Shown piece by piece: positions 471 to 58,740 of a stretch of DNA of 64,000 nucleotides (its first letter is position 1; each line of letters starts with the position of its first letter). Under the pieces are notes generated by a model. The model was not told the DNA's origin, searched no databases, and saw only the letters and a list, made by a program, of their open reading frames with translations. The stretch comes from Chrysemys picta bellii. Taxonomy: Eukaryota. The stretch spans positions 7,378,001 to 7,442,000 of the forward strand of contig NC_088796.1 of assembly GCF_011386835.1 (NCBI RefSeq), written 5' to 3'. The position numbers were made by a program, and so were the translations under genes.

Positions 471-1179
471 ATAAACAACTGTATGCATGGTCTTATAATG
501 GGAAGTGTTGGGCAACCTTAATAATAGGCTATTCCTATAATGTTGTCCTGGGAACATTTCCCCCAGACTCCTGAGGAAGACTTCATAGCAACCAAAGAAA
601 CTCCCCTCCAGAAATCCATTCAAGGTTTTTCAATGAGTCCAGTGTGTTTTGGAACAGGTCTATGGGAGTTTAGTTAATGTTTTGTGAATGCTCAGGCAAG
701 CCAGACATGATCAATAAAGCTCCTAGTTATATACCTCACTACTGAGTCTGCTAAGGAGCTCTGGGTATCCTGGGACACAACAGTACAAACTGCTAGACTC
801 GGTCTTGTGAGCCCTGAAAATCATAAAGATCATTATTTCAACTGTGTGTGTTCTCAGGAGAGAAACATAGAGAAGATTGCATCAGTATATTCTATTTTTC
901 TTTGAATATGGAAATAAAGCAACAATGTTTTTGTTAGGTTAAATATCAATGGTAAATCCTCAGTGGGGGTAAGTCAGTGATATCTCATTGGCCTAAGTTG
1001 AGTTATCCTGATTTTTGAGATTCTGGCCCAATATATTTTTAGAAAACGTAAATAGTTTCCCTATGTTAACTAATACAATCTGAGATAAAGAGAACATAAA
1101 GACTTTGGAAAACAAGTCCCATTTTTAAAAAAACAACAAGGAGTCTGGTGGCACCTTAAAGACTAACAGATTTATTTGG

Positions 1180-1220
1180 GCATAAGCTTTCGTGAATAAA
1201 AACCTCACTTCTTCGGATGC
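1180..1220 (-). ncRNA. Minimal hammerhead ribozyme motif, antisense copy in the inverted arm
   Basis: Reverse complement reads GCAT-CCGAAGA-A-GTGAG-gttttta-TTCAC-GAAA-GC-TT-ATGC. The single arm mismatch turns a stem II G-C pair into G.U. Confidence 0.65.
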
Positions 1221-1241
1221 ATAGAGAAGTGAGGTCTCTAT

Positions 1242-1282
1242 GCATCCGAAGAAGTGAGGTTTTTACTCACGAAAGCTTATGC
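1242..1282 (+). ncRNA. Minimal type-I hammerhead ribozyme motif (C4 variant core CCGAAGA)
   Basis: GCAT-CCGAAGA-A-GTGAG-gttttta-CTCAC-GAAA-GC-TT-ATGC: stem I GCAU/AUGC, perfect 5-bp stem II, AGCU stem III. Confidence 0.7.
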
Positions 1283-1689
1283 CCAAATAAATCTGTTAGT
1301 CTTTAAGGTGCCACCAGACTCCTTGTTGTTTTTGTAGATACAGACTAACACGGCTACCCCCTGATACTTAAGTCCCATTTTTGTTGTTTGTTTACTTTAT
1401 CTAAATCTGACAATTCAATGAGTGAGTTTCACTTTTTCTTGGTAGTTTTTTTTCTCTTTCTGGTTCTCATGCACTAGCCTCATGTTGTGAAATCTGCTAG
1501 TGTAACCCATTGGTCAGTGTGTGTTATTCATGCCCTTGAGTGCAAAGAGCATGTGAGTATGTCACAGAGGTTGGTATCAGTGGATGCTTCTTTAGTTTGA
1601 GTGGTAGCAGCTGGTGTTTTAGATCTAGAGGAGCCTGGTTCTACCCCTGAAATCATCCAAGGTGGTGGTCATCACACCAGCTTTATGGG

Positions 1690-3800: not shown

Positions 3801-4169
3801 CTCTATGACCTAATGTTTTATGATGATAGGTTGCTAGCCTATCACATTCAATCCCCAGCCTCGAGGGCCAGTGGGCTGCTTTTCATCTGCATCCTACCCT
3901 TTGACCTATCTGGCTTTGACAGCCCTACCAGGAATAGATGGTTAGGGTCATTTGAACACACAAACCTTCCCATTGGGTCAAGGAGCAGTCCTCAGGGAAG
4001 GGTTATCCCATATGGACCATTTTATTTAGGCACAACACCATGAATGACTTCCTGAAGCAAATGGGGGTTTCCAGAAATTATGACTGCACTATAGAGCATT
4101 TCACCCTTAGATGGCTGGTTCAAATCCAGCCTAGGCAATGCTGTAGTTATTTGCACTGTGTTCATTATG

Positions 4170-4715
4170 CAAATAGAAAGCTTTGAAAAAAGATTTTTCA
4201 TTTGAAGAAAACCAGATTTTAGCCAGAACTATATTTTTTGTTATCAAAAAGGTCATCAAAGTCTTTTGGCACAGAAAATCAGTTTTTCGAACAAAAAAGA
4301 TTATTTTTCTGCCAAAAGTTGATTTTTTTTTCCTTTCAACAGTATTATTTCTCATTGGAAAAGCGTTTTTAACAAAAATAACTATATTTTTTAATAATAA
4401 GTCTCATCAAAAATGTGACTGAATCATTTTCTCCTAAAAATTGATTTTCCAAGTAAATGTCTTTTTTTTTTAAATACTTTTTCTTTGGAAAAACACCAAA
4501 AATATCTATTTTTCATTGAATACATCCAAAAAATTGTTTGACAAATGCTTCCCTTTTTTAATCAGGAGTTTTTAGCGTAAAATTCTTTCTGCAACTAAAA
4601 ATTGTTTAAAAAAGGATTTTTCATTGGACGGAACCAAATCAAATTTTCAGCCCAAAATCCTTGGCTGAAAGGAAAATATAAATAAAAAGTTGCCAAGAAC
4701 AATTTTTCATCAAAC
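4170..4715. repeat. AT-rich degenerate DNA-transposon-like repeat (poly-A/T run family)
   Basis: Dense AAAA/TTTT runs with the same texture as the TIR-bounded copies at 40.5k, 46.4k and 46.9k; termini not seen here. Confidence 0.4.
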
Positions 4716-4736
4716 TATTCATCAAAGACGTTGCCG

Positions 4737-4795
4737 CACCCACCTTGTGTCTGTAATATCCTGGGACCAACATGGCTACAACAATATGGATACAA
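4737..4795 (+). mobile_element. Penelope-like family 2 3'-terminal fragment
   Basis: CACCCACCTTGTGTCTGTAATATCCTGGGACCAACATGGCTACAACAA matches the 3' ends at 13.2k and 56.65-56.71k. Confidence 0.7.
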
Positions 4796-4838
4796 TAATC
4801 TGGAATAAATACTGAGTTCCTTTACTGATGTTCTATTG

Positions 4839-5170
4839 CACTGTTTCTCAAACTGGGGTCGTCGCTTGTGTAGGGAAAGCCCCTGGCGGGCCGGGCCGGT
4901 TTGTTTACCTGCCCCGTCCGCAGGTCCGGCCGATCGCGGCTCCCACTGGCCGCGGTTCGCTGCTCTGGGCCAATGGGAGCTGCTGGAAGTGGCGCGGGCC
5001 AAGGGACATACTGGCCGCCGCTTCCAGCAGCCCCCATTGCCCTGCAGCGGCAAACCATGGCCAGTGAGAGCCGTGATCGGCCGGACCTGCAGATGGGGCA
5101 GGTAAACAAACTAGCCCGGCCCGCCGGGGCTTTCCCTACACAAGCGGCAACCCCAGTTTGAGAAACACTG
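4839..5170. mobile_element. hAT-type MITE, almost fully palindromic
   Basis: 20-bp TIR CA(C/G)TGTTTCTCAAACTGGGG; perfect 8-bp TSD TTCTATTG (4831-4838, 5171-5178); imperfect inverted arms of about 150 bp; CpG-rich. Confidence 0.92.
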
Positions 5171-5878
5171 TTCTATTGAATATACCTAGTGCATTTCAAA
5201 TGTGCCTTTTTTACCTATGAAGATATAAGGGATACCATTCCTTTGAAGTCATAGGTGTGCAGCTGGCTGGCTGATTGATTGATTAGCTCCACCCACTGCA
5301 CCTGAGAAAAGAGTTGGACCTGCATTAGCTGATTCTTATAAAATAGAGTAGCAGGAAATTGCAGGGGAAGGGAGGGACACACTCTAATTACAACAACTTC
5401 CAGAAAGCTGAAGGGGCCTAGGGCCATGCTCCTATTGGATTGCTACTATAAGCTACAGCAGAGAGGAATTACACCAGAAACCAAGTGGACAGAAGGGAGA
5501 TTGTATGAAGACCTTTATTACTGCGGCTCTGAGGTAAGAGCCAGGACATTTGGGGTTTCTGAATTTACTGCTGTGAAGACAGATTTGGAGAAGAGATTAC
5601 TTGGCTTGCACAGACTTTTGAGGGAAAAGTCTGAGGTTTTGATTAGTTTTGTTAAGAAGGCTTAAAATAAAACATCTAACCCTGCTGGAAACAGCTTCCC
5701 TGGATTCTGTGAGGGAGCTCTGAGAGAATTATCCCAGGAAGCGAGCTGGCTCGGCAAGAGTAAAACCTGGTCTGTTAGGAGGGGGTGCTCTAAGATAAGC
5801 CCCAATCCTTTACTTAGATCCAGACTTGTGTTCATTTTACCTATTACATTCCTGTCTTCACTAATTCCAATAGATAAA

Positions 5879-8415
5879 CACAGAATCACATAAATGTAGG
5901 CCAAGAAGGAAATTTGACAGATCATCTACTCCAGTCCCCTGCACTCATGGCAGAAGTAAGTAGTATCTAGACCATCCCTGGCAGGTGTTTCTCTAACCTG
6001 CTCTTTAAAATCTCCAATGATGGAGATTCCACAACCTCCCGAGGCAATTTATTCCAGTGCTTAACCACCTTGACAGTTAGGAAGTTTTTCCTAATGTCCA
6101 ACCTAAAACCTCCCTTGCTGCAATTTAAGCCCATTTCTTCTTGTCCTATCCTCAGAGGTTAATGAGAACAATTTTTTCCCTACTCCTTGTACCTTTTATG
6201 TACTTGAAAATTGTTATCATGTCCCTCCTCAATCTTCTCATCTCCAGACTAAACAAACTCAATTTTTTCAATCTTCCCTCACAGGTCATATTTTCAAGAC
6301 CTCTAATAATTTTTGTTGCTCTCTCTGACTTTCTTCAATTGGTCCACATCTTTCCTGAAATGTGGTGCCCGGAACTGGACACAATACTCCAGTTGAGGCC
6401 TAATCAGTGGCTAGTGGAGCAAAAGAATTACTTTTCCTGTCTTCCTTATAATACTCCTGCTAATACATCCCAGAATTATGTTTGCTTTTTTTGAAACAGT
6501 GTTACAAGTGTTGACTCGTATTTAGCTTGTGAGCCACTGTGACCCCCAGATCTCTTTCTGCAGTATTCCTAGACTGTCATTTCCCATTTTATATGCGTGC
6601 AACTGATTGTTCCTTCCTCAGTGGAGTACTTTGCATTTGTCCTTATTGAATTTCATCTTATTTTCTTCAGACCATTTCTTCAGTTTGTCCAGATCATTTT
6701 GATTTTAATCCTATCCTCCAAAGCACTTGCAATCCTTCCCATCTTGGTATTGACCAAAGACTTTATAATTGTACTCTCTATGTCATTATCTAAATTATTG
6801 ATGAAGATATTGAACAGAACCGGCCAAAGAACTGATCCCTGTGGGACCCCACTGGATACGTCCTCCAGCTTCACTGTGAACCACTAATAACTACTCTCTG
6901 GGAACGTTTTTGAAAAGAGTTATGCACCCACCTTATAGTAGCTCCATCTAGGTTGTATTTACCTAGTTTGTTTATGAGAAGGTCATCCAGCCAGTATCAA
7001 AAGCCTTACTAAAGCCAAGATGTATCACATCTACCACTTCTCCCCCATCCACAAGGCTTGTTACCCTGTCAAAGAAAGCTATTAGGTTGTTTTGACACAA
7101 TTTCATCTTGACAAATCCATGCTGACTATTAATTATCGCCTTATTATCTTGAAGCTATTTGCAAATTCATTGCTTAATTATTTGCTCCATAATCTTTCCG
7201 GATACTGAAGTTAAGATGACTGGTCTATAATTCCCTGGGTTGTCCTTATATCTCTTTTTATTGATGGACACTATATTTGCCCTTTTTGAGTCCTCTGGAA
7301 TCTCTTCCATCTTCCATGACTCTTTGAAAATAATCACTAATGGCTCAGATATCTTCTCAGTCAGCTCCTTGGTATTCTAGGATGTATTTCATCAGGCCCT
7401 GGTGACTTGAAGACATCTAACTTGTCTAAATAATTTTTAACTCGTTCTCTCCCTATTTTAGCCGCTGATCCTACATCATTTTTTACTGGAATTCACGATG
7501 TTAAATGTGAAATCACTACTAACCTTTTTGGTGAAAACAGAAACAAAAAAGGCATTTAAAAAACTTCTGCCATTTCCACATTTTCTGTTATTGTCCCATC
7601 CCCCCCATTGAGTAACAGGCCTACTCTGTCCTTGGACTTCCTCTTGTTTCTAACATATTTGTAGAATGTTTTCTTGTTACCTTTTATGTCTCTAGTTTAG
7701 TCTCTTTCTTTTTTATTCCTTGGCCTTTCTAATTTTGTCCCCACATATTTGTGTTATTTGTGTATATTCATTCTTTGTAGTTTGACCTAGTTTTCACTTT
7801 GTGTAGGACTCTTTTTTTTTGAGTTTGAGGTCATTGAAGATCTCCTGGGTAAGCCAGAGTCATCTGTTGCCATACTTCCTATCTTTCCTATGCAGTGGGG
7901 TAGTTTGCTATTGTGCCCTTAATAATGTCTCTTTGAAAAACTGCCAGCTCTCTTGAACTGTTCTTCCCTTTAGACTTGCTTCCCATGGGATCTTACCTAC
8001 CAACTCCATGAGTTTGCTAAAGTCTGCCTTCTGGAAATCCATTATCTTTATTGTTCTGTTTTCCCTCCTACCATTCCTTAGAATCATGAACTCTACCATT
8101 TAATCATCACTTTCACCTAAGCTGCCTTCCACTTTCAGTTCCTCCTTATTTGTCAAAATCAAATTAAGAACAGCCTCTCCCCTAGTAGCTTTCTCCACCT
8201 TCTGAAACAATAATAAAACAAATTCCAATACATTCCAAGAATTTGTTGGATAATCTGACCTGCTGAATTATTTTCCCAACTGATGTCTGGGTAGTTGAAG
8301 TCCCCCATCACCACTAGGTCCTGTGCTTTGAATGATTTTGTTAGTTGTTTAAAAAAAGGCTCATCCACCTCTTTTTCCTGTTTAGGTGGTCTGAAATAGA
8401 CCCCTACCATGACAT
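5879..8415 (-). mobile_element. CR1 LINE, 5'-truncated (ORF2 endonuclease C-terminus + RT + 3'UTR), pseudogenised
   Basis: Minus-strand ORF fragments: GVYFRPPKQEKEVDEPFFKQL and VVMGDFNYPDISW (APE domain), SSGVPQGSVLWPVLFNIFINNLD (RT); CR1-type 3' end near 5880. Confidence 0.93.
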
Positions 8416-8995
8416 CATAATAAAAAAGCTTTAATCAAAAAGAATATCCCTATAGGTCTTTTGTATCTGTAATTTCTGCATTATCTAGGATCCAGGTATG
8501 TAGCATTAAGAGGAGGTCTCCGCTATACAGCCTCCAAAATGCTGTTCTTTTTTTTTTCACCATGGTGTTCAAAGGAGCTGTAAAGATGCACACCTGTTGC
8601 CAGTGTTACTGGGAAAGCTTTGGATGTGAAGGATCTTAGCGTGGATGTGGATAGGTTATCCATTACCTAAATAAGTGCCAGGTGTTACAATATAGACTGA
8701 ACAAACCTATCCAGTATGTGATAAAGTTGATGTGATTAAAGGCAGCAATGACTTTGTTGTTTCTTTGTGTTAAAAGCAACTTGTCTGAGGTGGGAACTTC
8801 TTATATCATTTTAAGGACCTTTCAGAGAGTATTTCCAAAGTGTACCTTCCCCCGCCTGAGTGCTAGATTTTTTTTTTCTTCTATGTTTAGATCCCTTGAA
8901 TAGGAAGAACAAAAGCCCCGTGTGGGCCAACTTGAAAGAGATGTTTTCTCACCTTCACACACTATGCACTGGGGAGAATGGGAAATGCACATCTC

Positions 8996-9016
8996 TGTGT
9001 GTGTGTGTGTGTGTGT
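8996..9016. repeat. (TG)10 microsatellite
   Basis: Direct read. Confidence 0.95.
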
Positions 9017-15924: not shown

Positions 15925-16700
15925 ATTGTTTTTACCAGCCTCTGGTCACACGCTTAGCAATGCTGTGAAACATAGTCTTGGCAGGCTAAGTCAGATTCTT
16001 ATTAAATAGAAGGGAAAAGGTGAGGGTTAGGAAAGAGAAGATATAAGATGGGGAAGGAAAAGGACACCAAGGGGTTGGGGGTGGGGACACACACAAAGTC
16101 TCACATCCCAGGTGGCATTTGGGATTCTGATGTAGACAGTGGAGGTGGAGAAGTCAGCTGGGTCCCTCTCTTGGCCCAGTCTGGTCAGGATATTTCTCAG
16201 TATCAGGACAACAAAGGCCCAACAATGTCACAGTAGATCCCAGGGTCCCAGGAAACAGTGGAGGTGGTAGCCATGATTGTGAAGCTTGCCCCTTCCTATT
16301 GTTTCAGTCAGCCATTGTTGCACTTACGCTTCCCCTTTGCATCTTCTGCTGGTCTATTTTCCCCAAAAATATCTTTTTGAGGTCCCCAAAAGGGGAGTAG
16401 CAGGTAGGAAACCCACTACCTCATTATTTTGTCTAAGAGTTGGGCCTAATATCTGACACACCAATCTTGGTCCATTGATTTTCGGTCCCGCACTTCTCTT
16501 GTTTACCAGGCATGATCTTAACACTGACTTTGAGTTATATGAGTAGACCTTTTTGTTTAGACTAATTCGGTCTGTCTACTTTTTGCAGCTTTTCCCATGA
16601 ACATTTAGGGTTGTAGGTTCCTGTGACACCTTATGAACTTTCACTCCCTTTTCACAGTTGAGATCACAATTAGGATACATTTGTAGCCCCAGTTAGCACA
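15925..16700. repeat. Possible LTR remnant
   Basis: LTR-like composition with reverse AATAAA (TTATTAAAT near 15990); termini unresolved. Confidence 0.3.
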
Positions 16701-18117
16701 CTATGCTCTCTCTCCCTCCCTTGATCTTGTGGCTGACCAAGGCCAAACTAGTCGCCCAGTCCAAGGTAGAGCACCTAACAAGGTTGCTTTAATATATTCT
16801 GGTTGGAACAATTCTGCCAGCCCAGGTCACCAGAAGGGCATCATACTCCTTCTCTACTTCCTCTGCATCCCAACACATCTTCCCTTCTCTCCGCATCTCC
16901 GACATGTCCCCTACACTGGACGAGCAGGAGCAGCTGACAATAGATTTGTCAAGCGAGTATTACTCCCTACTGGGGGAACACTTAGCTGGCTATACAAAGC
17001 AGTTTTAGGTGCCCATGGCACCAATGGAGATGCAGAAAGGTCTGAAGATCTGTCTCATATTTAGCAGAGAGAAGACGTCCATATATCCATCCTTTGGTTC
17101 TGGTTTCTGGGATGGAGGGATGAGGACAGGTATTTTCGCAGAGGGTGGAATCACAATTTCTCTTTCTGGTTGCAGAATTTTCTTAGTGGAGGAAGAACCA
17201 AGCCCCTAACGCTGTAATGTGTTGAACACTGTGTTTTTGATGCATGAAAATAAACACAGAACTAAAGCTAAATATTTCTGCTTTCCAATTTAACCGGCTT
17301 TGTATTATAGAGCTGTGTGGCTTATGATGTTGTAGTGGAAGGAACATTAAATTGCCATCCAGTGTTCCTAGACAAAAGCTTTAGACAACAAAATCAATGT
17401 GAAATGTATGTATTTACTTTGCACTAAGAATATGTAACCATGATAGGCAAGTGACATGTGATCTTTCCTTTGAGGACATGTGACTTTTGCACTCAGTGCA
17501 TCTAGTGGATGTTCCAAGGCCTAAGCATTGCATTTCCCCTTACTCTTTCTAATATGGTCTATTCCTGAAAGCTGGGCAGGGTTCTCACTCCAACTTCACG
17601 TTTACACCTGTCTCTTATTTCAAGGAACTGATTCACGTTTTGTACCTGACTCCTTCGGGGCTGCCCTCCAGGTGAGGACCATATCCAAGCTTAGGAACGA
17701 GGGAAAAGTTATCTTTATGCAGTCAATGCCATGAACACAGGAAACTGATGACTTGGCATTCACGTACTGAGTCATCAATCATAAAAGAATCAATCCTTGC
17801 TCCCTGAGGAGCTGGCCCCAGGCAAACATAATTCTCTCTCACTGCCACCGAACTGAAAAGCTCTTGTCCCATTTGAAGGGACTGTATTTGTTCTTATTTC
17901 AACATTGATTCACTTGGCATTCAGGAGTATTTTCCAGAATCCCAGAAAATATCACCTAATTTATCCTCTCTACGGGGGAAGGTGATGTCTGTATATAATA
18001 GTGTAACATACATTGGGAAAGCAAGTGTATAGGGCACTACAAGTTGAATGGGAAACAGCATTAAGCTAGTTTACATAGGGCCTTAGGTAACCCAGAATCT
18101 TTGCAAAGAGAAAGAAA

Positions 18118-18810
18118 GTCTTGTGGTTAAGACTCTGGCCCGGCATTTGGATTTTCAGGGCTCACTCTTTGCTCTACCAATGCGTTTCCTGTGGGACTTT
18201 GGGCAAGGCATTTAATTGTTGTTTACTCTTGTGGTTGCATCTTGAAGCTCCAGTCATGGGACAGGACTCCGTTGCGCTGGGCACTGTGCAAACAGAGAAA
18301 AAAGATGATTCCTGTCCCAAACAGTTTATAGTCTAAGGCTATGTCCACGCTACCTCAGTAAGTCGACCTACGCTATGCAACTCCAGCTACGTTATTCACG
18401 TAGCTGGAGTCGACGTACCTTAGGTCGAGTTACTACGGGGTCTACACCGCCAGGGGTCGACAGGAGAAAATCTCCCATCAACTTACCTTACTCTTCTCAT
18501 CAGGGGTAGAATACAGAGGTCGACTGGAGAGCAATCTGCAGTCAATTTGGTGAGTCTTTACTAGACCCGCTAAATCGACCGCTGGTGGATTGATTTCGGA
18601 GCGTCGATCCCTGCGGTAGTGTAGACCTGCCCTCAGTAATCTCTCTTAATGTCTGTGACTCAGTTTCCCATCTGAAAACTGAGGATAATAATATTTCCTC
18701 TCTCCCACCCTTTATCTCTTTAAACTGTAAACTCTTCAGTCCAAGGGCTGTGCTACTATATGTATATATAGTGTGGCATATTGAGGACTGAGTCTAAATT
18801 GTAAGCTATT
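18118..18810. repeat. CORE-SINE (MIR-like) remnants interrupted by a Harbinger MITE
   Basis: TTGTGGTTAAGAC head, GGGACTTTGGGCAAG and CTCAGTTTCCCATCTG core motifs, plus an opposite-strand tail piece. Confidence 0.5.
18337..18632. mobile_element. PIF/Harbinger-type MITE
   Basis: TIR GGCTATGTCCACGCTAC / GTAGTGTAGACCTGCCC; 3-bp flanks TAA/TCA; internal palindrome CTCCAGCTACGT..ACGTAGCTGGAG; CpG-rich. Confidence 0.8.
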
Positions 18811-19714
18811 ACTTTAAGAGTGAGAGGTTTTCCTTGTCTTGTTTTCAGGCCATAGGGTGCTGTAGGTAAATAGGCAATCAGAGTCAATGTACAAAGCGTC
18901 CTCATACAGCAAGATGAGGTGAGTTTTGTCTTGCTGCCTTAGGGAGCAGCCTGCTTTGTCTCTCTCTGGTTTTGGTTACTGTATGTTATGTGTATGGATT
19001 CTAAGATTAAAAGTTTTTCCTTGCAACCTTCCAGCAAGAATTTGATGTTTTTATATAACTTTGATGTGTGTATGGTGTGAGCAGAACATACAGGGCCTAG
19101 CTCAATGAAACCTTCAGGTACTCTTGCAATAATGGAAATCCTGAAACTGGTACTGGAGGTTAGGTAAACAGTGCAGGCAAATTCACAGCAGGCCCTAAGG
19201 CTCTGCATACAGTGCAATTGCTCCTGATGCTCCATTGATGGGGGAAAAAGGACAGGGAGTGGCAGGAAACCCATGTGTTTTGTTTTAATTGAATAGGAAG
19301 AAGATGGAAGAGGTGAAATGAGCCACAGAATCCTACTAGTACAGGGAAGGCAATTAAGGAAACTGATACCCCTGCCTAATCAATTCTTTCACTTCCCCTA
19401 AAGGCATGTAAGACTGGTACTGCAATGATAGTCCACATAAGCAATTGATAACATACCACTATGCTCCCTGGAATGTAACAAAGAAGGAAAGGGGCCCAGG
19501 ACATGACAATTTGAGTAGTACCTAGAGGCCCCAACTAAGGTCAGGACCCTATTGTACTAGGTGCTGTGTAGACACATATTAGGAGAGTCCCTGCTCTACA
19601 CAGTTTAAATCAGACTGGGCAAGACAGACCAAGGAAGTGTTTTTAGCAGACAGTGAACTGAGGGACAGAGAGATTATGTGAAAGAAGTTCAGCAGCTTTT
19701 CTTTTTCCCCTTCT

Positions 19715-20080
19715 CCCAGCACCAGAAGAAAAGGGACAGTGGATGAAATAGGACGGTGGCAAATTCAAACCTGGTAAAAAGGTACTTCTTTTCACAAAAT
19801 GTGTAACTAGACTGTGGAACTCATTGTCACAGGATGTTAGGGAGACCGAGAACGCGGTAAGACTCAGAGGGATTAGACACTTATATTGATATCAAGAATG
19901 TCCAGAGTTAGAATAATTAATGCTAACATTTATTTGCAAGAGACATTAAACCTTATGTTTCAGGGCTTAAATCAATCTTTAAGAAATAGAGATATAGAGG
20001 TTTCTTGCCTTTTCCTCTGAAGCATCTGGTTCTTACCACTGCTGGAGGCAGTTTACCAGAGAAATGGACCCAGTCTGAGA
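19715..20080 (+). mobile_element. CR1/L2-like LINE 3' fragment
   Basis: TTCTTTTCACAAAATGTGTAACTAGACTGTGGAACTCATTG (RT C-terminal region) followed by a 3'UTR-like segment. Confidence 0.6.
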
Positions 20081-22335: not shown

Positions 22336-22788
22336 TAAACGGTTATGTGCTACACTTTCTTCTGGAGGACCATTGTAACTAGAGAATCATAGTGCTTGTT
22401 AGAGAGGAAGGGCTGAGTGCTCCAAGCATAACGGTTGGAATATAACAGGGTCTTCTCAGCCATGCACATTCCAGCAACAGAAAAAAAAAAAAGATTCCCA
22501 TGCACTTTCCTGTGTGCTGGTTAATTGGAGGAGACCTTCAAACCGGAATCATGTCTATACTGAATGATTGTTATGGTTCCTGAGCCAAATTCTTCCATGG
22601 TGGCATGGCACAGTCTTTTAGGGATGAATTTGGTCTCCTAGATCACTTTTAATCAAAGTGTGTATGGAAGGCTTCCCATAGTATTTTTGGCCAGTCCTTT
22701 TCCCCACTGGTGTATAGCATGCTGTGGGCCACTGGTGCCTTGTGCTCCAGAGGTAGATTAAGTGAATCCTGTGTCTATATAAAGCTAG

Positions 22789-22953
22789 AGAGGGTCCTGT
22801 GGCACCTTTGAGACTAACAGAAGTACTGGGAGCATAAGCTTTCGTGGGTAAGAACCTCACTTCTTCAGATGCAGTACTTCTGTTAGTCTCAAAGGTGCCA
22901 CAGGACCCTCTGTTGCTTTTTACAGATTCAGACTAACACGGCTACCCCTCTAA
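22789..22953 (+). mobile_element. Penelope-like family 1 insertion with inverted 5' segment
   Basis: Perfect 40-bp inverted repeat 22789-22828 / 22872-22911; 13-bp TSD TATATAAAGCTAG (22776-22788, 22954-22966). Confidence 0.88.
22832..22872 (-). ncRNA. Minimal type-I hammerhead ribozyme motif, intact core
   Basis: Reverse complement: GCAT-CTGAAGA-A-GTGAG-gttctta-CCCAC-GAAA-GC-TT-ATGC. Confidence 0.8.
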
Positions 22954-43318: not shown

Positions 43319-43616
43319 TTCATGCATGAATCCGGAGCAGCAGACAAAAAACTACTTTAAGGGCTTATCTGCATGAGAAAGTACCAGCGGTTTAACTCTG
43401 AGGTGTGACTTTCAAACCCATTTATTTTAACCAGTGCAAAAGGCTGATGCAATATTCGGGGTGGGAGGGTGGGGAGGGTTGGTTTTTCAGTGAAAACCCA
43501 GGTTTGGGGAATGAAAATGGCTTTTTAAAAAATGTCCATTTAGTAGAAAAGCCGTTTTCCATTGGGAAAAGAAAAAAGAACGGGAATTTTTCAATCAGCT
43601 GTACTGCTTAGCATTA

Positions 43617-43752
43617 AGCCATGTTGGCATCTGAAGAAGTGAGGTTCTTACCCACGAAAGCTTATGCTCCCAATACTTCTGTTAGTCTTAAAGGTGCCAC
43701 AGGACCCTCTGTTGCTTTTTACAGATTCAGACTAACACGGCTACTCCTCTGA
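43617..43752 (+). mobile_element. Penelope-like family 1 insertion
   Basis: 12-bp TSD TGCTTAGCATTA (43605-43616, 43753-43764); 9-nt inverted 5' piece AGCCATGTT matching the reverse complement of the element's own AACACGGCT (8/9). Confidence 0.88.
43627..43667 (+). ncRNA. Minimal type-I hammerhead ribozyme motif, intact core
   Basis: GCAT-CTGAAGA-A-GTGAG-gttctta-CCCAC-GAAA-GC-TT-ATGC; identical to the 22832-22872 copy. Confidence 0.8.
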
Positions 43753-45692
43753 TGCTTAGCATTAGTTTTCAGAGTTATCAACACATTGAGATAATTAGGG
43801 CAAACTCCTGACCTAGGAAAGCATCCCTATTCTGGAAAGTGTTTACACGCATATTTGACTTCAAGTATGTACTCAAGTCCCAGTGAATTGTAATGGTATT
43901 TAAAGGTAAGTGTGTGCTTAAATTCTTTGCTGATTCAGGGCCCTTGGGGCAGATTTACAGAGACATTTAGGTGAGTAAAGATACAGATAGGCACCTAAGT
44001 CCAGATCCTCAAAAGTTCAGAAATCCGTGGGAGTTAAGTGCCTAAATACCTTTGAGGATTGGGGACCTAGAAGGATTTAAACAAAATCACTTAAGCAGGT
44101 TAGGTGCTTAACTCCCATTGAAAGTCAATGCGAGTTGGGTGCTTAAGGTCAGATTTGTAAACATTTTTAAAAACATCAAGATGCAGGGAGATGCCTAGTG
44201 GAATTTTCAAAAGTGTCGACGTGTCTAACTCTCATTGATTTTTCGTGGGTGGGGGAGGCATAATATGTGATCATGTAACTGAAGACTATATCATAATGCA
44301 TACACACAAATGGGCTGAATTAAGGTCACACTGGCAACCTTAATTATAGTATTTTCCGGCTTTTGAGTGCTTGACTTTGCAACCTTAATAATGTTCTTTT
44401 AATGTAATATTTTTGTGCATAATTTAATAATGCATAGTATATAAGTGCCAAGGACATTTAAAAGGATTTCTTTTAAAGAGAGATACCCCTCTGAACAGCA
44501 GTTTATTATTTCAGAAACTATTTTGCAGAAACAGAGTAATTTTAACAAGGAATATATATATATATATATTCTAACTTCAAACTTGTCTGAATAAAATATT
44601 ATCCTTTTTGAACTACTGTATGTAATTTCTTCAAAATATATTGTTCTGAATTCTCTTTAATGAGAATCTGTGTACAGAATTTATACTTGCATGCTACTAT
44701 CAATGTATCTCTAATTGTACAAGTGCAAGGAAATGGAAAATGGATTTTTTTCCATAAAATGACATAAAAAGCATGTATGTTTCTTGGTACAAAGTATTTA
44801 ATTGTATTAAGCTGCTTCTGTGTAATTGTATTGCTGAGGCACCCTAGAGAGTATGGTAGTCGCTGATAATTAATCTGGTAATTTCTTTCTAATCTCTGTA
44901 TTTATCAATACATTCCCCGTATTACAGTCTGTTGTAAATCTGTCATAGTAAATTGTCTATGGATCTTTCATACAGATCACTTTCGTGGCCTGGGTCTGAC
45001 ATACATAGATCATTAGATTCTACAATCTTGGGTATCCATGTGTAGAAGGAACTGTATTATGTTAATTGTATGTATTTGAGAAACTGTGCATGATCGTGTA
45101 ATTAGTGACTGCAGGTAGGATGCTGTGCTACACACCTAAAAGGCACAGGACAGAACTCACAGTGCAGGGGGGCTAAGGAAGCTTTAAGCCATCTTTAGTC
45201 CCTCACAAATCCAGGTTGGAGAGACCCTGTATAATTTAGACAGCCCTAGGGGCCAATCTAAATTGCAACAACTTCCCCTGTGGGCCACAGCACTGCCCTG
45301 AAGCATGGCGGTCCTGTGTGATGAAGAGACACCTCTGATGGCATGCTAGGTTCAGGGATGGAGGCAGCAGGGGCATGTCCTCAGCACACAGCTCTGCCTA
45401 ACTAGCAAGGGGGTCTGAGAAGTCGGGCCTTCTGTCTGTCCTAGGAGTGCCTGCATTGGAGGACTCCACTTTGGCTTTATGCAAAGTTTGTAGGGTTCCA
45501 TTATGCTGTGCTGGCCCTTTGCCCTGTATAAAGGAGCTGGATCTGGGGTTAAGGTTCACACCCTGAGTTGCAGTACATAAGCACTATGGGGCAGAGTTAA
45601 GATTGTGTATGCAAAGACTTAATCATGAGTAACTTTATTCACAAGAGTAAACCACTCATGGGGGAATTCTGAGAGTCAACATGAGGGACATT

Positions 45693-52361: not shown

Positions 52362-53753
52362 TCAAAGCCTCCCTGACTCATATAGCTCTGCACTGAACTC
52401 TTCTATTAGCTCTCGTATCTGACTATTCAAATCCAGCAGACAGCCACTCCACCTCCGCCCGCCACCCCACCCCCTTTTCGCTTCAAAGATATTATGCAGG
52501 ACACAACAGGTAGCTATAACCATTGGGATATTTTTCTCACTGAGGCCCAATCTTGTGAGTAAAAAACACCAGCGTCCCTTCAAACGACCGAAAGCAAATT
52601 CAATTCTCATTCTGCACCTGCTGAGCTAGTAGTTGAATCTTTCCTTGGTGCTGCCAAGGTGGCCGGTGTTTGGCTCGTGAGCCAGGGGGTTAAGGGATAG
52701 GCTGGGTCCCCCATAGAATCATAGAAGATTAAGGTTGGAAGAGACCTCAGGAGGTCATCTAGTCCAACCCCCTGCTCAAAGCAGGACCAACACCAACTAA
52801 ATTATCCCAGCCAGGGTTTTGTCAAGCTGGGCCTTAAAAATTGCCAGGATCACCACTGGTATCTCAAAAATTGCCAGGATCACTATTGGCATCTCAACGT
52901 TGACAATGGTAATCTGCTGGTTGGGAAAGAAAGTCCCTGTTGACAGCTTTCTGAACAGTCCTGCATTCTTAAAGATGCAAGTATCATGCATCTTCCCTGA
53001 TCTGCTCACACTGATTTCAGAGAAGCACAGTGCTTGCATAAACATAGAAAAGTAACCCTTTCTGTTGATGTATTCCATGGTAAGGTGCTCCAGTGCCAAA
53101 ACTGGGATATCCGTGCTGCCTATTATCACCCTCCCTACACACAGTTCAGGAACCCCATTGCTATTGATCCATCCACTATGTCCTGAACATCGCTGAGTGT
53201 CACACTCCTGTGAAACGAGGAGATTAATGACTGAGCACGCTTGCTGGACAACACCTCCCACGATGGATTTCCTGATTCCAATTAGATTCCCAACTGACCT
53301 GTAGCAATCCAGCATTTCAAGTTTCCACAATGTGTTTGCCACTTGCTTCTCCACGGTCAGTGCAGCTCTCATTTTGGTGTCCCTGCTGGCAGGGGTGAGC
53401 TCTGCACACAGATCCAGGAATGTGGCCTTGCATATCTGAACGTTCTGCAGCCACTGCTCATCATCCCAAACCTGCATTATGATGCGATCCCGCCAGTCCG
53501 AGCTCGTTTCTCGGGCCTAGAAGTGGCGCTCTACCATCTGCAGCTGCTCTGTGAATGCCATCAACAACTTCAAATCGGTTCTCACTATGTTCCACAGCAA
53601 TCTGCCCTCCAAGACATCATCATGTTCCCCACTCATTCGGTTCTTCGTGTGGCTCTTCAGATACTGCAGAACCATGCGCTGTGTGCTTGCAATGCTCAGG
53701 ACAATAGTGTAGAGCTGTACAGACTCCATGCTTCTAACAGAGATGGTAGTCAT
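52362..53753 (-). pseudogene. Harbinger (DDE_Tnp_4 / HARBI1-like) transposase pseudogene
   Basis: MQVWDDEQWLQN..KATFLDLC, YINRKGYFSM, SGKMHD..IFKN, MPIVIL|GDPAYP, IEFAFGRLKGRW, CCVLHNI; frameshifts and an internal CR1 insertion. Confidence 0.9.
52712..52840 (-). mobile_element. CR1 3' end inserted in the Harbinger transposase
   Basis: CATAGAATCATAGAAGATTAAGGTTGGAAGAGACCTCAGG... Confidence 0.9.
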
Positions 53754-56501: not shown

Positions 56502-56710
56502 GGCTGAGGTAATCTCTTCTATTGGACCAACTTCTGTTAGTGAGAGAGACAAGCTTTCAAGATTATATAGCTTTTGTCTTCAGGTCACCCTGTGTAAGCT
56601 GGAAAGGTTGTCTCTCTCACCAATAAAAGTTGGTCCAATAAAAGATATTACTTTACCTACCTTGTCCCTCTAACTCCTGGGACTGAAACAGCTACAGCAA
56701 CACTGCATAC
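56502..56710 (+). mobile_element. Penelope-like family 2 insertion with inverted 5' segment
   Basis: Imperfect inverted arms about 56506-56558 / 56602-56658; candidate TSD AATATTTCTTAT (56490-56501) / AAAATTTCTTAT (56711-56722). Confidence 0.8.
56548..56586 (-). ncRNA. Minimal hammerhead ribozyme motif, family 2 (stem II decayed)
   Basis: Reverse complement: GAC-CTGAAGA-caaaagctatataatctt-GAAA-GC-TT-GTC; same core as family 1, different complementary stem I. Confidence 0.65.
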
Positions 56711-58612: not shown

Positions 58613-58740
58613 AGTATCGGGGGTAGCCATGTTAGTCTGTATCCACAAAAACAACAAGGAGTCCGGTGGCACCTTAAAGACTAACAGATTTATTTGGGCA
58701 TCAGCTTTCGTGGGTAAAAAACCTCACTTCCTTAGATGCA
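58613..58740 (-). mobile_element. Penelope-like family 1 terminal repeat with degenerate hammerhead (58698-58739)
   Basis: Near-identical to the 1.1k subfamily; ribozyme reads GCAT-CTAAGGA-A-GTGAG..CCCAC-GAAA-GC-TG-ATGC (core and cleavage site mutated). Confidence 0.85.

What the first reader, a model, noticed from the sequence alone, without database searches (positions are those of the whole stretch)
43617..43752. Penelope-like terminal repeats carry a minimal, dimer-type hammerhead ribozyme with a CUU cleavage triplet
Seen: 43627-43667 reads GCAU-CUGAAGA-A-GUGAG-guucuua-CCCAC-GAAA-GC-UU-AUGC. This is the hammerhead core (CUGANGA...GAAA...UH) with a 4-bp stem I (GCAU/AUGC), a stem II hairpin with one A.C mismatch, an extra A after A9, and stem III collapsed to A15.1-G-C-U16.1. 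It lies in a 136-bp insertion with a perfect 12-bp TSD. Known: Penelope-like retroelement terminal repeats encode minimal type-I hammerheads with a short palindromic stem III that cleave efficiently as dimers. Inference: AGCU is self-complementary, so two copies (tandem repeats or two RNAs) could swap strands to form a 4-bp stem III and cleave after C-U-U. Five insertions in this 64 kb carry the motif, so an abundant dispersed ribozyme family is implied. I cannot tell whether these turtle motifs have been characterised before.
Basis: partly seen in the sequence, partly recalled or inferred. Interest (0 to 1): 0.85.

Follow-up and report, generated by a model that had tools for sequence, protein, structure and literature searches.

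The report
Penelope-type retroposon fossil with minimal hammerhead
The 136-bp insertion is a truncated copy of a very abundant Penelope-like retroelement that still carries that element's minimal hammerhead ribozyme motif, a class already described (turtles included) in 2014, so it is a clean example of something known.

Summary
Window 43627-43667 reads stem I, CUGAAGA, an extra A, stem II, GAAA, GC, UU, stem I. It lies in a 136-bp insertion with a perfect 12-bp target-site duplication.

- Stem II folds best as 6 bp with a bulged A, not with an A.C mismatch.
- The window holds four insertions of this family with five motif copies, plus a second family at 56509-56651. Only two motif copies keep an intact core.

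The motif meets every sequence feature of the Penelope-like-element "min-HHR" of Cervera and de la Pena 2014. That paper already notes such motifs in turtle and snakes.

The layout matches the anole Poseidon element: a palindromic 4-nt helix III and about 89 nt from the cut site to the insertion's 3' end.

Contigs of public runs put the family at roughly 10^5 copies. They show no frequent variant inside the motif, against nine variable sites just downstream, so source elements conserved it. Individual copies decay neutrally.

Activity was not tested. An isolated monomer should be inert, and published work on these motifs reports weak dimer cleavage that insertion in vitro did not need.

This scan flagged the same motif about 25 times elsewhere in this genome.

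Verdict: real, and a known kind.

The parts
43605..43616 (.). Left target-site duplication, TGCTTAGCATTA
   Evidence: Identical 12-mer at 43753-43764
43617..43626 (+). 10 nt (AGCCATGTTG) between the duplication and the motif. Either upstream element sequence or filler. Other copies end at (T)GCATC.
   Evidence: In one search mapped depth starts sharply at 43627, and the loose-end consensus upstream reads ...TCCAT.
43627..43630 (+). Hammerhead stem I, 5' strand (GCAU)
   Evidence: Pairs with 43664-43667 in the minimum-free-energy fold
43631..43638 (+). Core C3-A9 (CUGAAGA) plus the extra unpaired A typical of PLE min-HHRs
   Evidence: [quoted passage not shown]
43639..43655 (+). Stem II hairpin GUG[A]GGU-UCUU-ACCCAC, with G10.1-C11.1 closing it
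   Evidence: RNAfold. Copy B has a continuous 5-bp version, GUGAG/CUCAC.
43656..43663 (+). GAAA core, the collapsed palindromic helix III (A15.1-G-C-U16.1) and U17. The predicted cut lies between 43663 and 43664.
   Evidence: AGCU is self-complementary, and AAGCUU is a 6-nt palindrome.
43664..43667 (+). Stem I, 3' strand (AUGC)
43668..43727 (+). Variable middle of the element
   Evidence: Holds all 9 variant sites at 5% or more and the one indel seen across the family
43728..43752 (+). Conserved AC-rich 3' end (CAGACTAACACGGCTAC...). Inferred site where reverse transcription starts, 89 nt after the cut site.
   Evidence: No variant at 5% or more. By analogy, the anole Poseidon element starts reverse transcription 82-89 nt after its cut site in an AC-rich stem loop (PMC11167929).
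43753..43764 (.). Right target-site duplication
22774..22951 (.). Fold-back copy C. The inverted arm carries an identical intact motif at 22832-22872(-), which forms the 43-nt loop between 60-nt arms.
1128..1364 (.). Fold-back copy B (102-nt arms, 98% complementary). Both motifs read CCGA in the core.
58620..58739 (-). Solo copy D, with two disabling core changes

Best explanation
The 136-bp insertion is a fixed, severely 5'-truncated or short non-autonomous copy of a Penelope-like retroelement (PLE).

How it arose (inferred): reverse transcription started in the AC-rich 3' region and ran back through the hammerhead, about 89 nt upstream. Integration left a 12-bp target-site duplication.

What it carries (shown): the lineage's 'min-HHR', a type-I hammerhead with a 4-bp stem I, an unpaired nucleotide after A9, a G-C-closed stem II, and helix III reduced to the palindrome AGCU. 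An active junction therefore needs two copies to swap strands.

Where it is conserved (shown at consensus level): in the source elements that generated the family. In dispersed copies it is not conserved and decays.

This copy (inferred): it keeps an intact core because it has not yet mutated, not because of selection. As an isolated monomer it is most likely catalytically silent.

Source elements (inferred): the motif presumably acts on multimeric or paired transcripts. That role is still unproven for any PLE.
For: - Motif and duplication are as described.
- All sequence traits listed for PLE min-HHRs in PMC4209133 are present: the extra nucleotide between 9 and 10.1, G10.1-C11.1, palindromic 15.2-16.2, and a helix I of 4-5 bp.
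- PLE-type insertion architecture: inverted 5'-truncated partner copies at B and C, 'opposite strands' and go-back joints in DNA runs, target-site duplications of about 8 to 13 bp, and no poly(A). This matches PMC8557442.
- The anole Poseidon element has the same design, CCU-CUGAGGA-U-stem II-GAAA-CG-UC|AGG, and starts reverse transcription 82-89 nt after the cut. Here the distance is 89 nt, and all have an AACAC-containing 3' end.
- Abundance: 16,000-20,000 contigs per DNA run map to the element. Summed depth is 2-5 million against about 23 on the unique flank. Window density (5 motif copies in 64 kb) points to the same order, 10^5.
- Conservation in sources: 0 of 41 motif positions have a variant at 5% or more, against 9 of 60 positions just downstream (Fisher p=0.007). 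Between subfamilies the motif differs at 3/41 and the middle at 12/56.
- Neutral decay in copies: B and D, of the same subfamily, differ at 5/41 in the motif and 3/79 elsewhere. Three of five motif copies have core-disabling changes.
- This locus has zero depth on its flanks in the two putative RNA runs.
Against: - No RT/GIY-YIG ORF or longer element could be linked to this family. None is in the window, and there were no hits in viral or metagenome collections. The PLE assignment therefore rests on architecture and motif.
- No cleavage data exist. All runs were contigs, which cannot show RNA ends.
- U17 and the AAGCUU palindrome, which could pair A14 with U17 in a dimer, argue for weak activity even in source elements.
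- The variant table is depth-weighted, dominated by one subfamily, and clips divergent 5' ends, so the conservation signal is modest.
- Four of five copy arms end at (T)GCATC, the 5' edge of the motif. Random 5' truncation does not explain that.
Confidence: 0.8

Rival explanations
1. The ~126-nt unit, from (U)GCAUC to the AC-rich 3' end, is a complete SINE-like or retrozyme-like non-autonomous element. It would have its own defined RNA 5' end at the edge of the hammerhead and be mobilised in trans by PLE reverse transcriptase. It would not be a randomly truncated PLE.
For: - B (both arms), C(-) and D all begin at (T)GCATC.
- Mapped depth rises sharply at 43627.
- Other notes of this scan report 123-155-bp insertions of the same kind (unchecked).
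- A 2026 preprint (10.64898/2026.07.22.740005) argues that animal retrozymes are non-autonomous PLE derivatives and finds them in 4 of 5 reptiles, with monomers common.
- No conserved reading frame is shared by the subfamilies, which differ by a 1-nt indel at 43669.
Against: - Copy A extends 10 nt further upstream.
- The loose-end consensus ...TTTCACTCCAT upstream of 43627 recurs in three of the four runs and ends alike (...CTCCAT) in the fourth. This suggests some copies continue into a longer element.
- The sharp edge is partly an artefact of A's own divergent upstream 10 nt.
- No tandem arrays were seen in the window.
Confidence: 0.35
2. The hammerhead resemblance is a chance feature of a repeat consensus and has no ribozyme ancestry.
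For: - Rfam hammerhead models give no hit even at E up to 10.
- The specified core is short.
- Helix III is absent in the monomer, U17 is a poor leaving context, and the modelled dimer is not favoured.
Against: - The descriptor hit rate is about 0.017 per 128 kb of shuffled sequence.
- An unrelated second family in the window has the same core and GAAAGCUU with a different, still complementary stem I, GAC/GUC.
- The anole Poseidon element, whose motif was shown to cleave and to respond to C3/G8 compensatory mutants, has the same architecture and spacing.
- The motif is less variable than its neighbouring sequence.
Confidence: 0.04
3. This particular copy, or dispersed copies generally, has been co-opted as a functional self-cleaving RNA in host transcripts.
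For: - The core is intact here and at 22832-22872.
- Element sequence is present in contigs of putative RNA runs.
- The locus is shared by several organisms' runs: 0.74-0.96 of the words, flanks included.
Against: - Flanks of this locus have no depth in the RNA-like runs.
- Sister copies carry disabling changes at a neutral or higher rate.
- No partner copy lies in cis on the same strand.
- Sharing between species is expected for an old neutral insertion in a slowly evolving lineage.
Confidence: 0.03

Closest known systems
min-HHR of metazoan Penelope-like elements (Cervera and de la Pena 2014, PMC4209133; Lunse, Weinberg and Breaker 2017, known to me by title only)
   Same: - CUGANGA and GAAA boxes
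- An unpaired nucleotide between A9 and 10.1
- G10.1-C11.1
- Helix I of 4-5 bp without a defined loop
- Helix III reduced to a palindrome
- Mostly dispersed single motifs in truncated PLEs, some as close pairs on opposite strands
- Reported in turtle
   Different: - U17 (triplet CUU), so that AAGCUU is a 6-nt palindrome
- Stem II of 5-6 bp with a bulged A, against 7-8 bp in the schistosome families
- Apparent copy number near 10^5, about tenfold above the 4,000-9,000 the paper called remarkable for coelacanth and Xenopus
Poseidon_Ac (PAc) hammerhead of Anolis carolinensis (Frangieh et al. 2024, PMC11167929)
   Same: - Type-I motif with a 3-4-bp stem I, an extra nucleotide after A9, and a palindromic 4-nt helix III (ACGU there, AGCU here)
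- Insertion 3' end 82-89 nt after the cut site, in an AC-rich region containing AACAC
   Different: - PAc's ORF starts inside stem II and runs through the downstream 90 nt. The turtle family has no frame conserved between subfamilies.
- PAc has C17.
- PAc is linked to an RT-EN ORF, and its motif's cleavage was shown in vitro.
Non-LTR retrozymes (Cervera and de la Pena 2020, PMC7229834; Li, Clavereau and Pollet 2026 preprint)
   Same: Short non-coding units with a type-I hammerhead, target-site duplications, and an evolutionary link to PLE pLTRs. Monomer derivatives are dispersed.
   Different: Retrozymes are defined by direct tandem repeats that yield circular RNAs. Here only solo and inverted copies are seen, and no circular RNA evidence was obtainable.
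Rfam Hammerhead_1 (RF00163) and other Rfam hammerhead families
   Same: Catalytic core consensus and type-I topology
   Different: There is no helix III hairpin, and the motif fails the models entirely

Membership tests
PLE min-HHR (Cervera and de la Pena 2014) | Conserved boxes CUGANGA and GAAA, with UH at the cleavage site | tested here: met
   CUGAAGA at 43631-37, GAAA at 43656-59, U16.1-U17 at 43662-63. Also met at 22832-22872(-). Not met in copies B and D.
PLE min-HHR (Cervera and de la Pena 2014) | [quoted passage not shown] | tested here: met
   A at 43638; G43639-C43655 closes stem II
PLE min-HHR (Cervera and de la Pena 2014) | Palindromic 15.2-16.2 (helix III absent or 1-2 bp), allowing a double hammerhead | tested here: met
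   A-G-C-U at 43659-62 is self-complementary. The swapped-strand dimer can be drawn without a pseudoknot, but its model energy is marginal (-15.9 against -17.0 kcal/mol for two monomers).
PLE min-HHR (Cervera and de la Pena 2014) | Consensus families with covariation in the helices | tested here: inconclusive
   Stem I is GCAU/AUGC here, GAC/GUC in the second family (56509-56651) and CCU/AGG in the anole PAc. Stem II is bulged in A and continuous in B. There are too few independent sequences for statistics. The family-wide data show only invariance.
PLE min-HHR (Cervera and de la Pena 2014) | Self-cleavage as dimer or multimer | not testable with these tools
   Only contig-level run data were available. 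These cannot show RNA ends.
Penelope-like elements | ORF with a telomerase-like RT and a GIY-YIG endonuclease | tested here: inconclusive
   No such ORF in the window. No related loci in the viral or metagenome collections. Short copies are not expected to carry it.
Penelope-like elements | Strong 5' truncation, with an inverted 5'-truncated copy abutting the 5' end (fold-back), or partial tandems (pLTR) | tested here: met
   Fold-backs at 1126-1336 and 22769-22931. Opposite-strand and go-back joints appear in contigs of DNA runs. Criterion from PMC8557442.
Penelope-like elements | Hammerhead near the 3' end, and a 3' end at an internal AC-rich reverse-transcription start rather than poly(A) | tested here: met
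   89 nt from the cut site to the 3' end, AACAC-containing end, no A-tail. PAc comparison.
Non-LTR retrozymes | Direct tandem repeats of the hammerhead unit that give circular RNAs | tested here: not met
   No direct tandem in the window. Only a handful of go-back joints among about 16,000 contigs. Circular RNA could not be tested.
Rfam Hammerhead_1/3/II/HH9/HH10 | Score at or above the family threshold | tested here: not met
   No hammerhead hit at gathering thresholds or at E up to 10 on 43560-43800

The most novel reading that the evidence does not exclude
Turtle genomes carry on the order of 10^5 copies of a ~126-nt hammerhead-headed unit whose 5' end sits at the 5' edge of the ribozyme, not at its cleavage site. 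This would be a SINE-like, PLE-dependent retroposon in which the folded ribozyme, or a transcription start or processing event tied to it, sets the RNA 5' end. The conserved AAGCUU/U17 variant would serve dimerisation or protein binding rather than cleavage.
Probability: 0.15. Interest if true: 0.5.

Novelty: already known. Interest (0 to 1): 0.2.

Why it matters
It gives a well-anchored, intact example of a PLE min-HHR in a reptile, with clear insertion boundaries. The geometry matches the one PLE studied biochemically: about 89 nt from the cut site to the point where reverse transcription starts.

Two points could interest specialists. First, the family appears very abundant, roughly tenfold above the numbers called remarkable in 2014. 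Second, copy 5' ends cluster at the ribozyme's 5' edge, while no copy in the window starts at the cleavage site. That agrees with the 2024 in-vitro result that uncleaved RNA is the template, and it sharpens the open question of what PLE hammerheads are for. It does not reveal a new kind of ribozyme or element.

Tried and rejected
- Rfam scan of the whole window at gathering thresholds, and of 43560-43800 at E up to 10: no hammerhead family hit. This is uninformative, because those models require a helix III hairpin.
- A strict descriptor with a perfect stem II found nothing.
- Search for an autonomous PLE: ORFs of at least 110 aa in the window gave only a weak DDE_Tnp_4 match. Element patterns had 0 matches in viral contigs and in both metagenome scans.
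- RNA ends at the predicted cut site: impossible, because every available run is kept as contigs.
- RNAcofold of two motifs returned the trivial fully swapped duplex. The explicit double-hammerhead structure scored no better than two monomers. Thermodynamic modelling therefore neither supports nor excludes dimer activity.
- Lunse et al. 2017 (PMC5785218) is not held. The supplement of PMC4209133 with the turtle motifs is not held either, so sequence identity with the published turtle motifs could not be checked.
- Considered and rejected: an alternative register with A17 (GAAAGCUUA|UGC), because it would leave an extra U between stem I and C3.
- Considered and rejected: a coding role for the element. 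One frame is open across copy A (42 codons, about 14% by chance), but the 1-nt indel that separates the subfamilies breaks it.

Full report
**1. What is in the sequence**

Window 43617-43752 is a 136-bp insertion bounded by a perfect 12-bp duplication, TGCTTAGCATTA, at 43605-43616 and 43753-43764.

- RNAfold of this 41-mer recovers the hammerhead topology: a 4-bp stem I (5 bp if the flanking G-U is counted) and a stem II hairpin.
- Stem II is best drawn as GUG[A]GGU/ACCCAC, that is 6 bp with a bulged A and a UCUU loop. This fits better than 5 bp with an A.C mismatch.
- A minimal-hammerhead descriptor I wrote finds only this copy and an identical one at 22832-22872(-) with a palindromic helix III. 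It allows 0-1 extra nucleotide after A9, at least 4 stem II pairs with one irregularity, 0-6 nt between A15.1 and U16.1, H17 other than G, and a stem I of at least 3 bp. About 0.017 such hits are expected per shuffled window.
- A stricter pattern gave 2 hits against 0.01 expected.
- Rfam's hammerhead models do not score the motif at any threshold tried. That is expected, because they require a helix III hairpin.

**2. Copies in the window**

blastn of the 136-mer against the window, together with direct reading, gives four insertion events of this family.

| Copy | Coordinates | Form | Duplication / arms | Core |
|---|---|---|---|---|
| A | 43617-43752 (+) | solo | 12-bp duplication | intact |
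| B | 1128-1220(-) / 1242-1364(+) | inverted fold-back | 102-nt arms, 98% complementary; AAGTCCCATTTTT | both arms read CCGA (position 4 is C) |
| C | 22774-22872(-) / 22872-22951(+) | fold-back | 60-nt arms; ATATAAAGCTAG | inverted arm intact |
| D | 58620-58739 (-) | solo | about 8 bp with one mismatch | position 5 is A, position 17 is G |

- In C the inverted arm's motif forms the 43-nt loop. The forward arm starts only at element position 55.
- In total there are five motif copies, two of them intact, lying on opposite strands 20.8 kb apart.
- A second, unrelated fold-back family at 56509-56570/56590-56651 has CUGAAGA-C-...-GAAAGCUU|GUC with stem I GAC/GUC. Its stem II is decayed.

**3. 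What kind of element it is**

The architecture is the one described for Penelope-like elements (PLEs) in PMC8557442:
- heavy 5' truncation;
- an inverted 5'-truncated copy abutting the 5' end;
- target-site duplications;
- no poly(A);
- a hammerhead near the 3' end.

The closest biochemically studied element is Poseidon_Ac of Anolis (PMC11167929).
- Read across the tandem junction of the supplementary consensus, its motif is CCU-CUGAGGA-U-stem II-GAAA-CG-UC|AGG. This is the same design as here, with ACGU in place of AGCU.
- Its reverse transcription starts 111-118 nt into the ORF, which is 82-89 nt after the cut site, in an AC-rich stem loop.
- In copy A the predicted cut at 43663/43664 lies 89 nt before the 3' end. 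That end reads CAGACTAACACGGCTAC..., with the AACAC also seen at the PAc start sites and in the second family.

I could not link the family to an RT/GIY-YIG ORF. None is in the window, and pattern scans of the viral and metagenome collections found nothing. The PLE assignment is therefore strong but indirect.

**4. Family-wide evidence from public runs**

Many runs hold the stretch, including runs from several differently coded organisms that hold it together with its flanks (0.74-0.96 of words). The insertion is therefore probably old and shared.

All runs are kept as contigs. Four were laid on 43560-43810 at 80% likeness or more.
- In the two DNA-type runs, 16,000-20,000 contigs map to the element.
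- Summed word depth is 2-5 million on the element, against about 23 on the unique flank of X1.
- The tool warns that this is not a copy number. Still, the order of magnitude (10^5) agrees with the window density of 5 motif copies per 64 kb.
- No position in 43627-43667 shows an alternative letter at 5% or more in any run.
- By contrast, 43668-43727 holds nine such sites (four of them at 25-45%) and one indel. Fisher's test gives 0/41 against 9/60, p=0.007.
- The last 25 nt are again invariant.

Caveats on this comparison:
- The measure is depth-weighted.
- It is dominated by the subfamily of copy A.
- Divergent 5' ends are clipped rather than counted.

Within the window the same two-level pattern appears.
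- Between subfamilies (A against B), the motif differs at 3/41 and the middle at 12/56.
- Within a subfamily (B against D), the motif differs at 5/41 and the rest at 3/79. The motif differences there include core-disabling changes.

I read this as conservation of the motif and of the 3' end in the source elements, with neutral decay after insertion.

**5. How it most likely works**

Shown:
- The sequence has every primary- and secondary-structure trait of the PLE min-HHR.
- It belongs to a huge family.
- It sits at a fixed distance from the insertion's 3' end.

Inferred:
- A monomer cannot close helix III. AGCU leaves no loop, so an active junction needs two copies that swap both helix III and stem I, as in the double hammerhead of Forster et al. 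1988 and Cervera and de la Pena 2014.
- The swapped structure is nested and feasible. In the nearest-neighbour model it scores -15.9 kcal/mol, against -17.0 for two separate monomers.
- U17 also makes AAGCUU a 6-nt palindrome. In a dimer that could pair A14 with U17 and compete with the active core.

Published data point the same way:
- PLE min-HHRs are inactive as monomers and cleave poorly as dimers in vitro (PMC4209133; PMC6765202).
- In PAc, dead-core mutants did not affect insertion in vitro, and no RNA-seq reads ended at the cut site.

In the window, no copy begins at the cut site. Four of five arms begin at (T)GCATC, upstream of the motif. The templates were therefore uncleaved RNAs.

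This locus has no same-strand partner nearby, and its flanks have no depth in the two RNA-like runs. My best account is a silent fossil of a motif that matters, if at all, in the source element's transcripts.

**6. Comparison with what is known, and novelty**

Cervera and de la Pena 2014 list the family traits:
- G10.1-C11.1;
- palindromic 15.2-16.2;
- a helix I of 4-5 bp;
- mostly dispersed single motifs from truncated PLEs, with some pairs on opposite strands.

They also state that similar motifs are conserved in turtle and snakes. Lunse et al. 2017 (not held) is cited for dimeric cleavage. A 2026 preprint links short hammerhead units in reptiles to PLE pLTRs.

This scan has also flagged the same motif repeatedly in this genome: 25 notes, none followed up.

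What might be mildly new:
- the apparent abundance, near 10^5 against the 4,000-9,000 called remarkable in 2014;
- the U17/AAGCUU variant shared by two families;
- the clustering of 5' ends at the ribozyme's edge.

I cannot resolve that last point. Copy A runs 10 nt further upstream. The upstream loose-end consensus ...TTTCACTCCAT recurs in three of the four runs and ends alike (...CTCCAT) in the fourth, which hints at a longer parent.

**7. Verdict**

It is a known kind, of low to moderate interest.

Noticed in passing
window 56509-56651: A second Penelope-like fold-back family (62-nt arms, 84% complementary, 19 nt between). On the minus strand it has a decayed hammerhead, CUGAAGA-C-...-GAAAGCUU|GUC, with stem I GAC/GUC. 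Its 3' end is also AC-rich (…CAGCAACACTGCATACA).
   Followed up: partly
window 1221-1241: The spacer between the two arms of fold-back B (TAGAGAAGTGAGGTCTCTA) repeats GAAGTGAGGT from the hammerhead stem II region. This looks like a template-switch footprint at the junction of the two cDNAs.
   Followed up: no
window 1126-1139 and 22774-22790: In both fold-backs the inverted arm lacks the last 35-50 nt of the element and abuts the duplication at a T/A-rich stretch. This suggests internal, microhomology-type priming of the second arm.
   Followed up: no
window 43627 (5' edge), loose ends: Contigs that run upstream of 43627 give a recurrent consensus ending ...TTTCACTCCAT in three runs (...CTCCAT in the fourth). 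Copy A instead has AGCCATGTTG. In the window, four of five arms start at (T)GCATC. The 5' boundary of the family is unexplained.
   Followed up: partly
window 43632-43757, depth table: The ratio of RNA-like to DNA depth rises about 2.5-fold from the hammerhead part to the 3' part of the element, for both putative RNA runs (X17, X25) measured against the DNA run X1. Depth from contigs is unreliable, so this is only a hint of 3'-biased representation.
   Followed up: no
window 52797-53477 (-): A 226-aa ORF with a weak DDE_Tnp_4 match (E 0.0014, below the Pfam cutoff). Probably a PIF/Harbinger-type transposase remnant.
   Followed up: no
window about 21490 onward: A run of N totalling 156 bases in the window (assembly gap or masked).
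   Followed up: no
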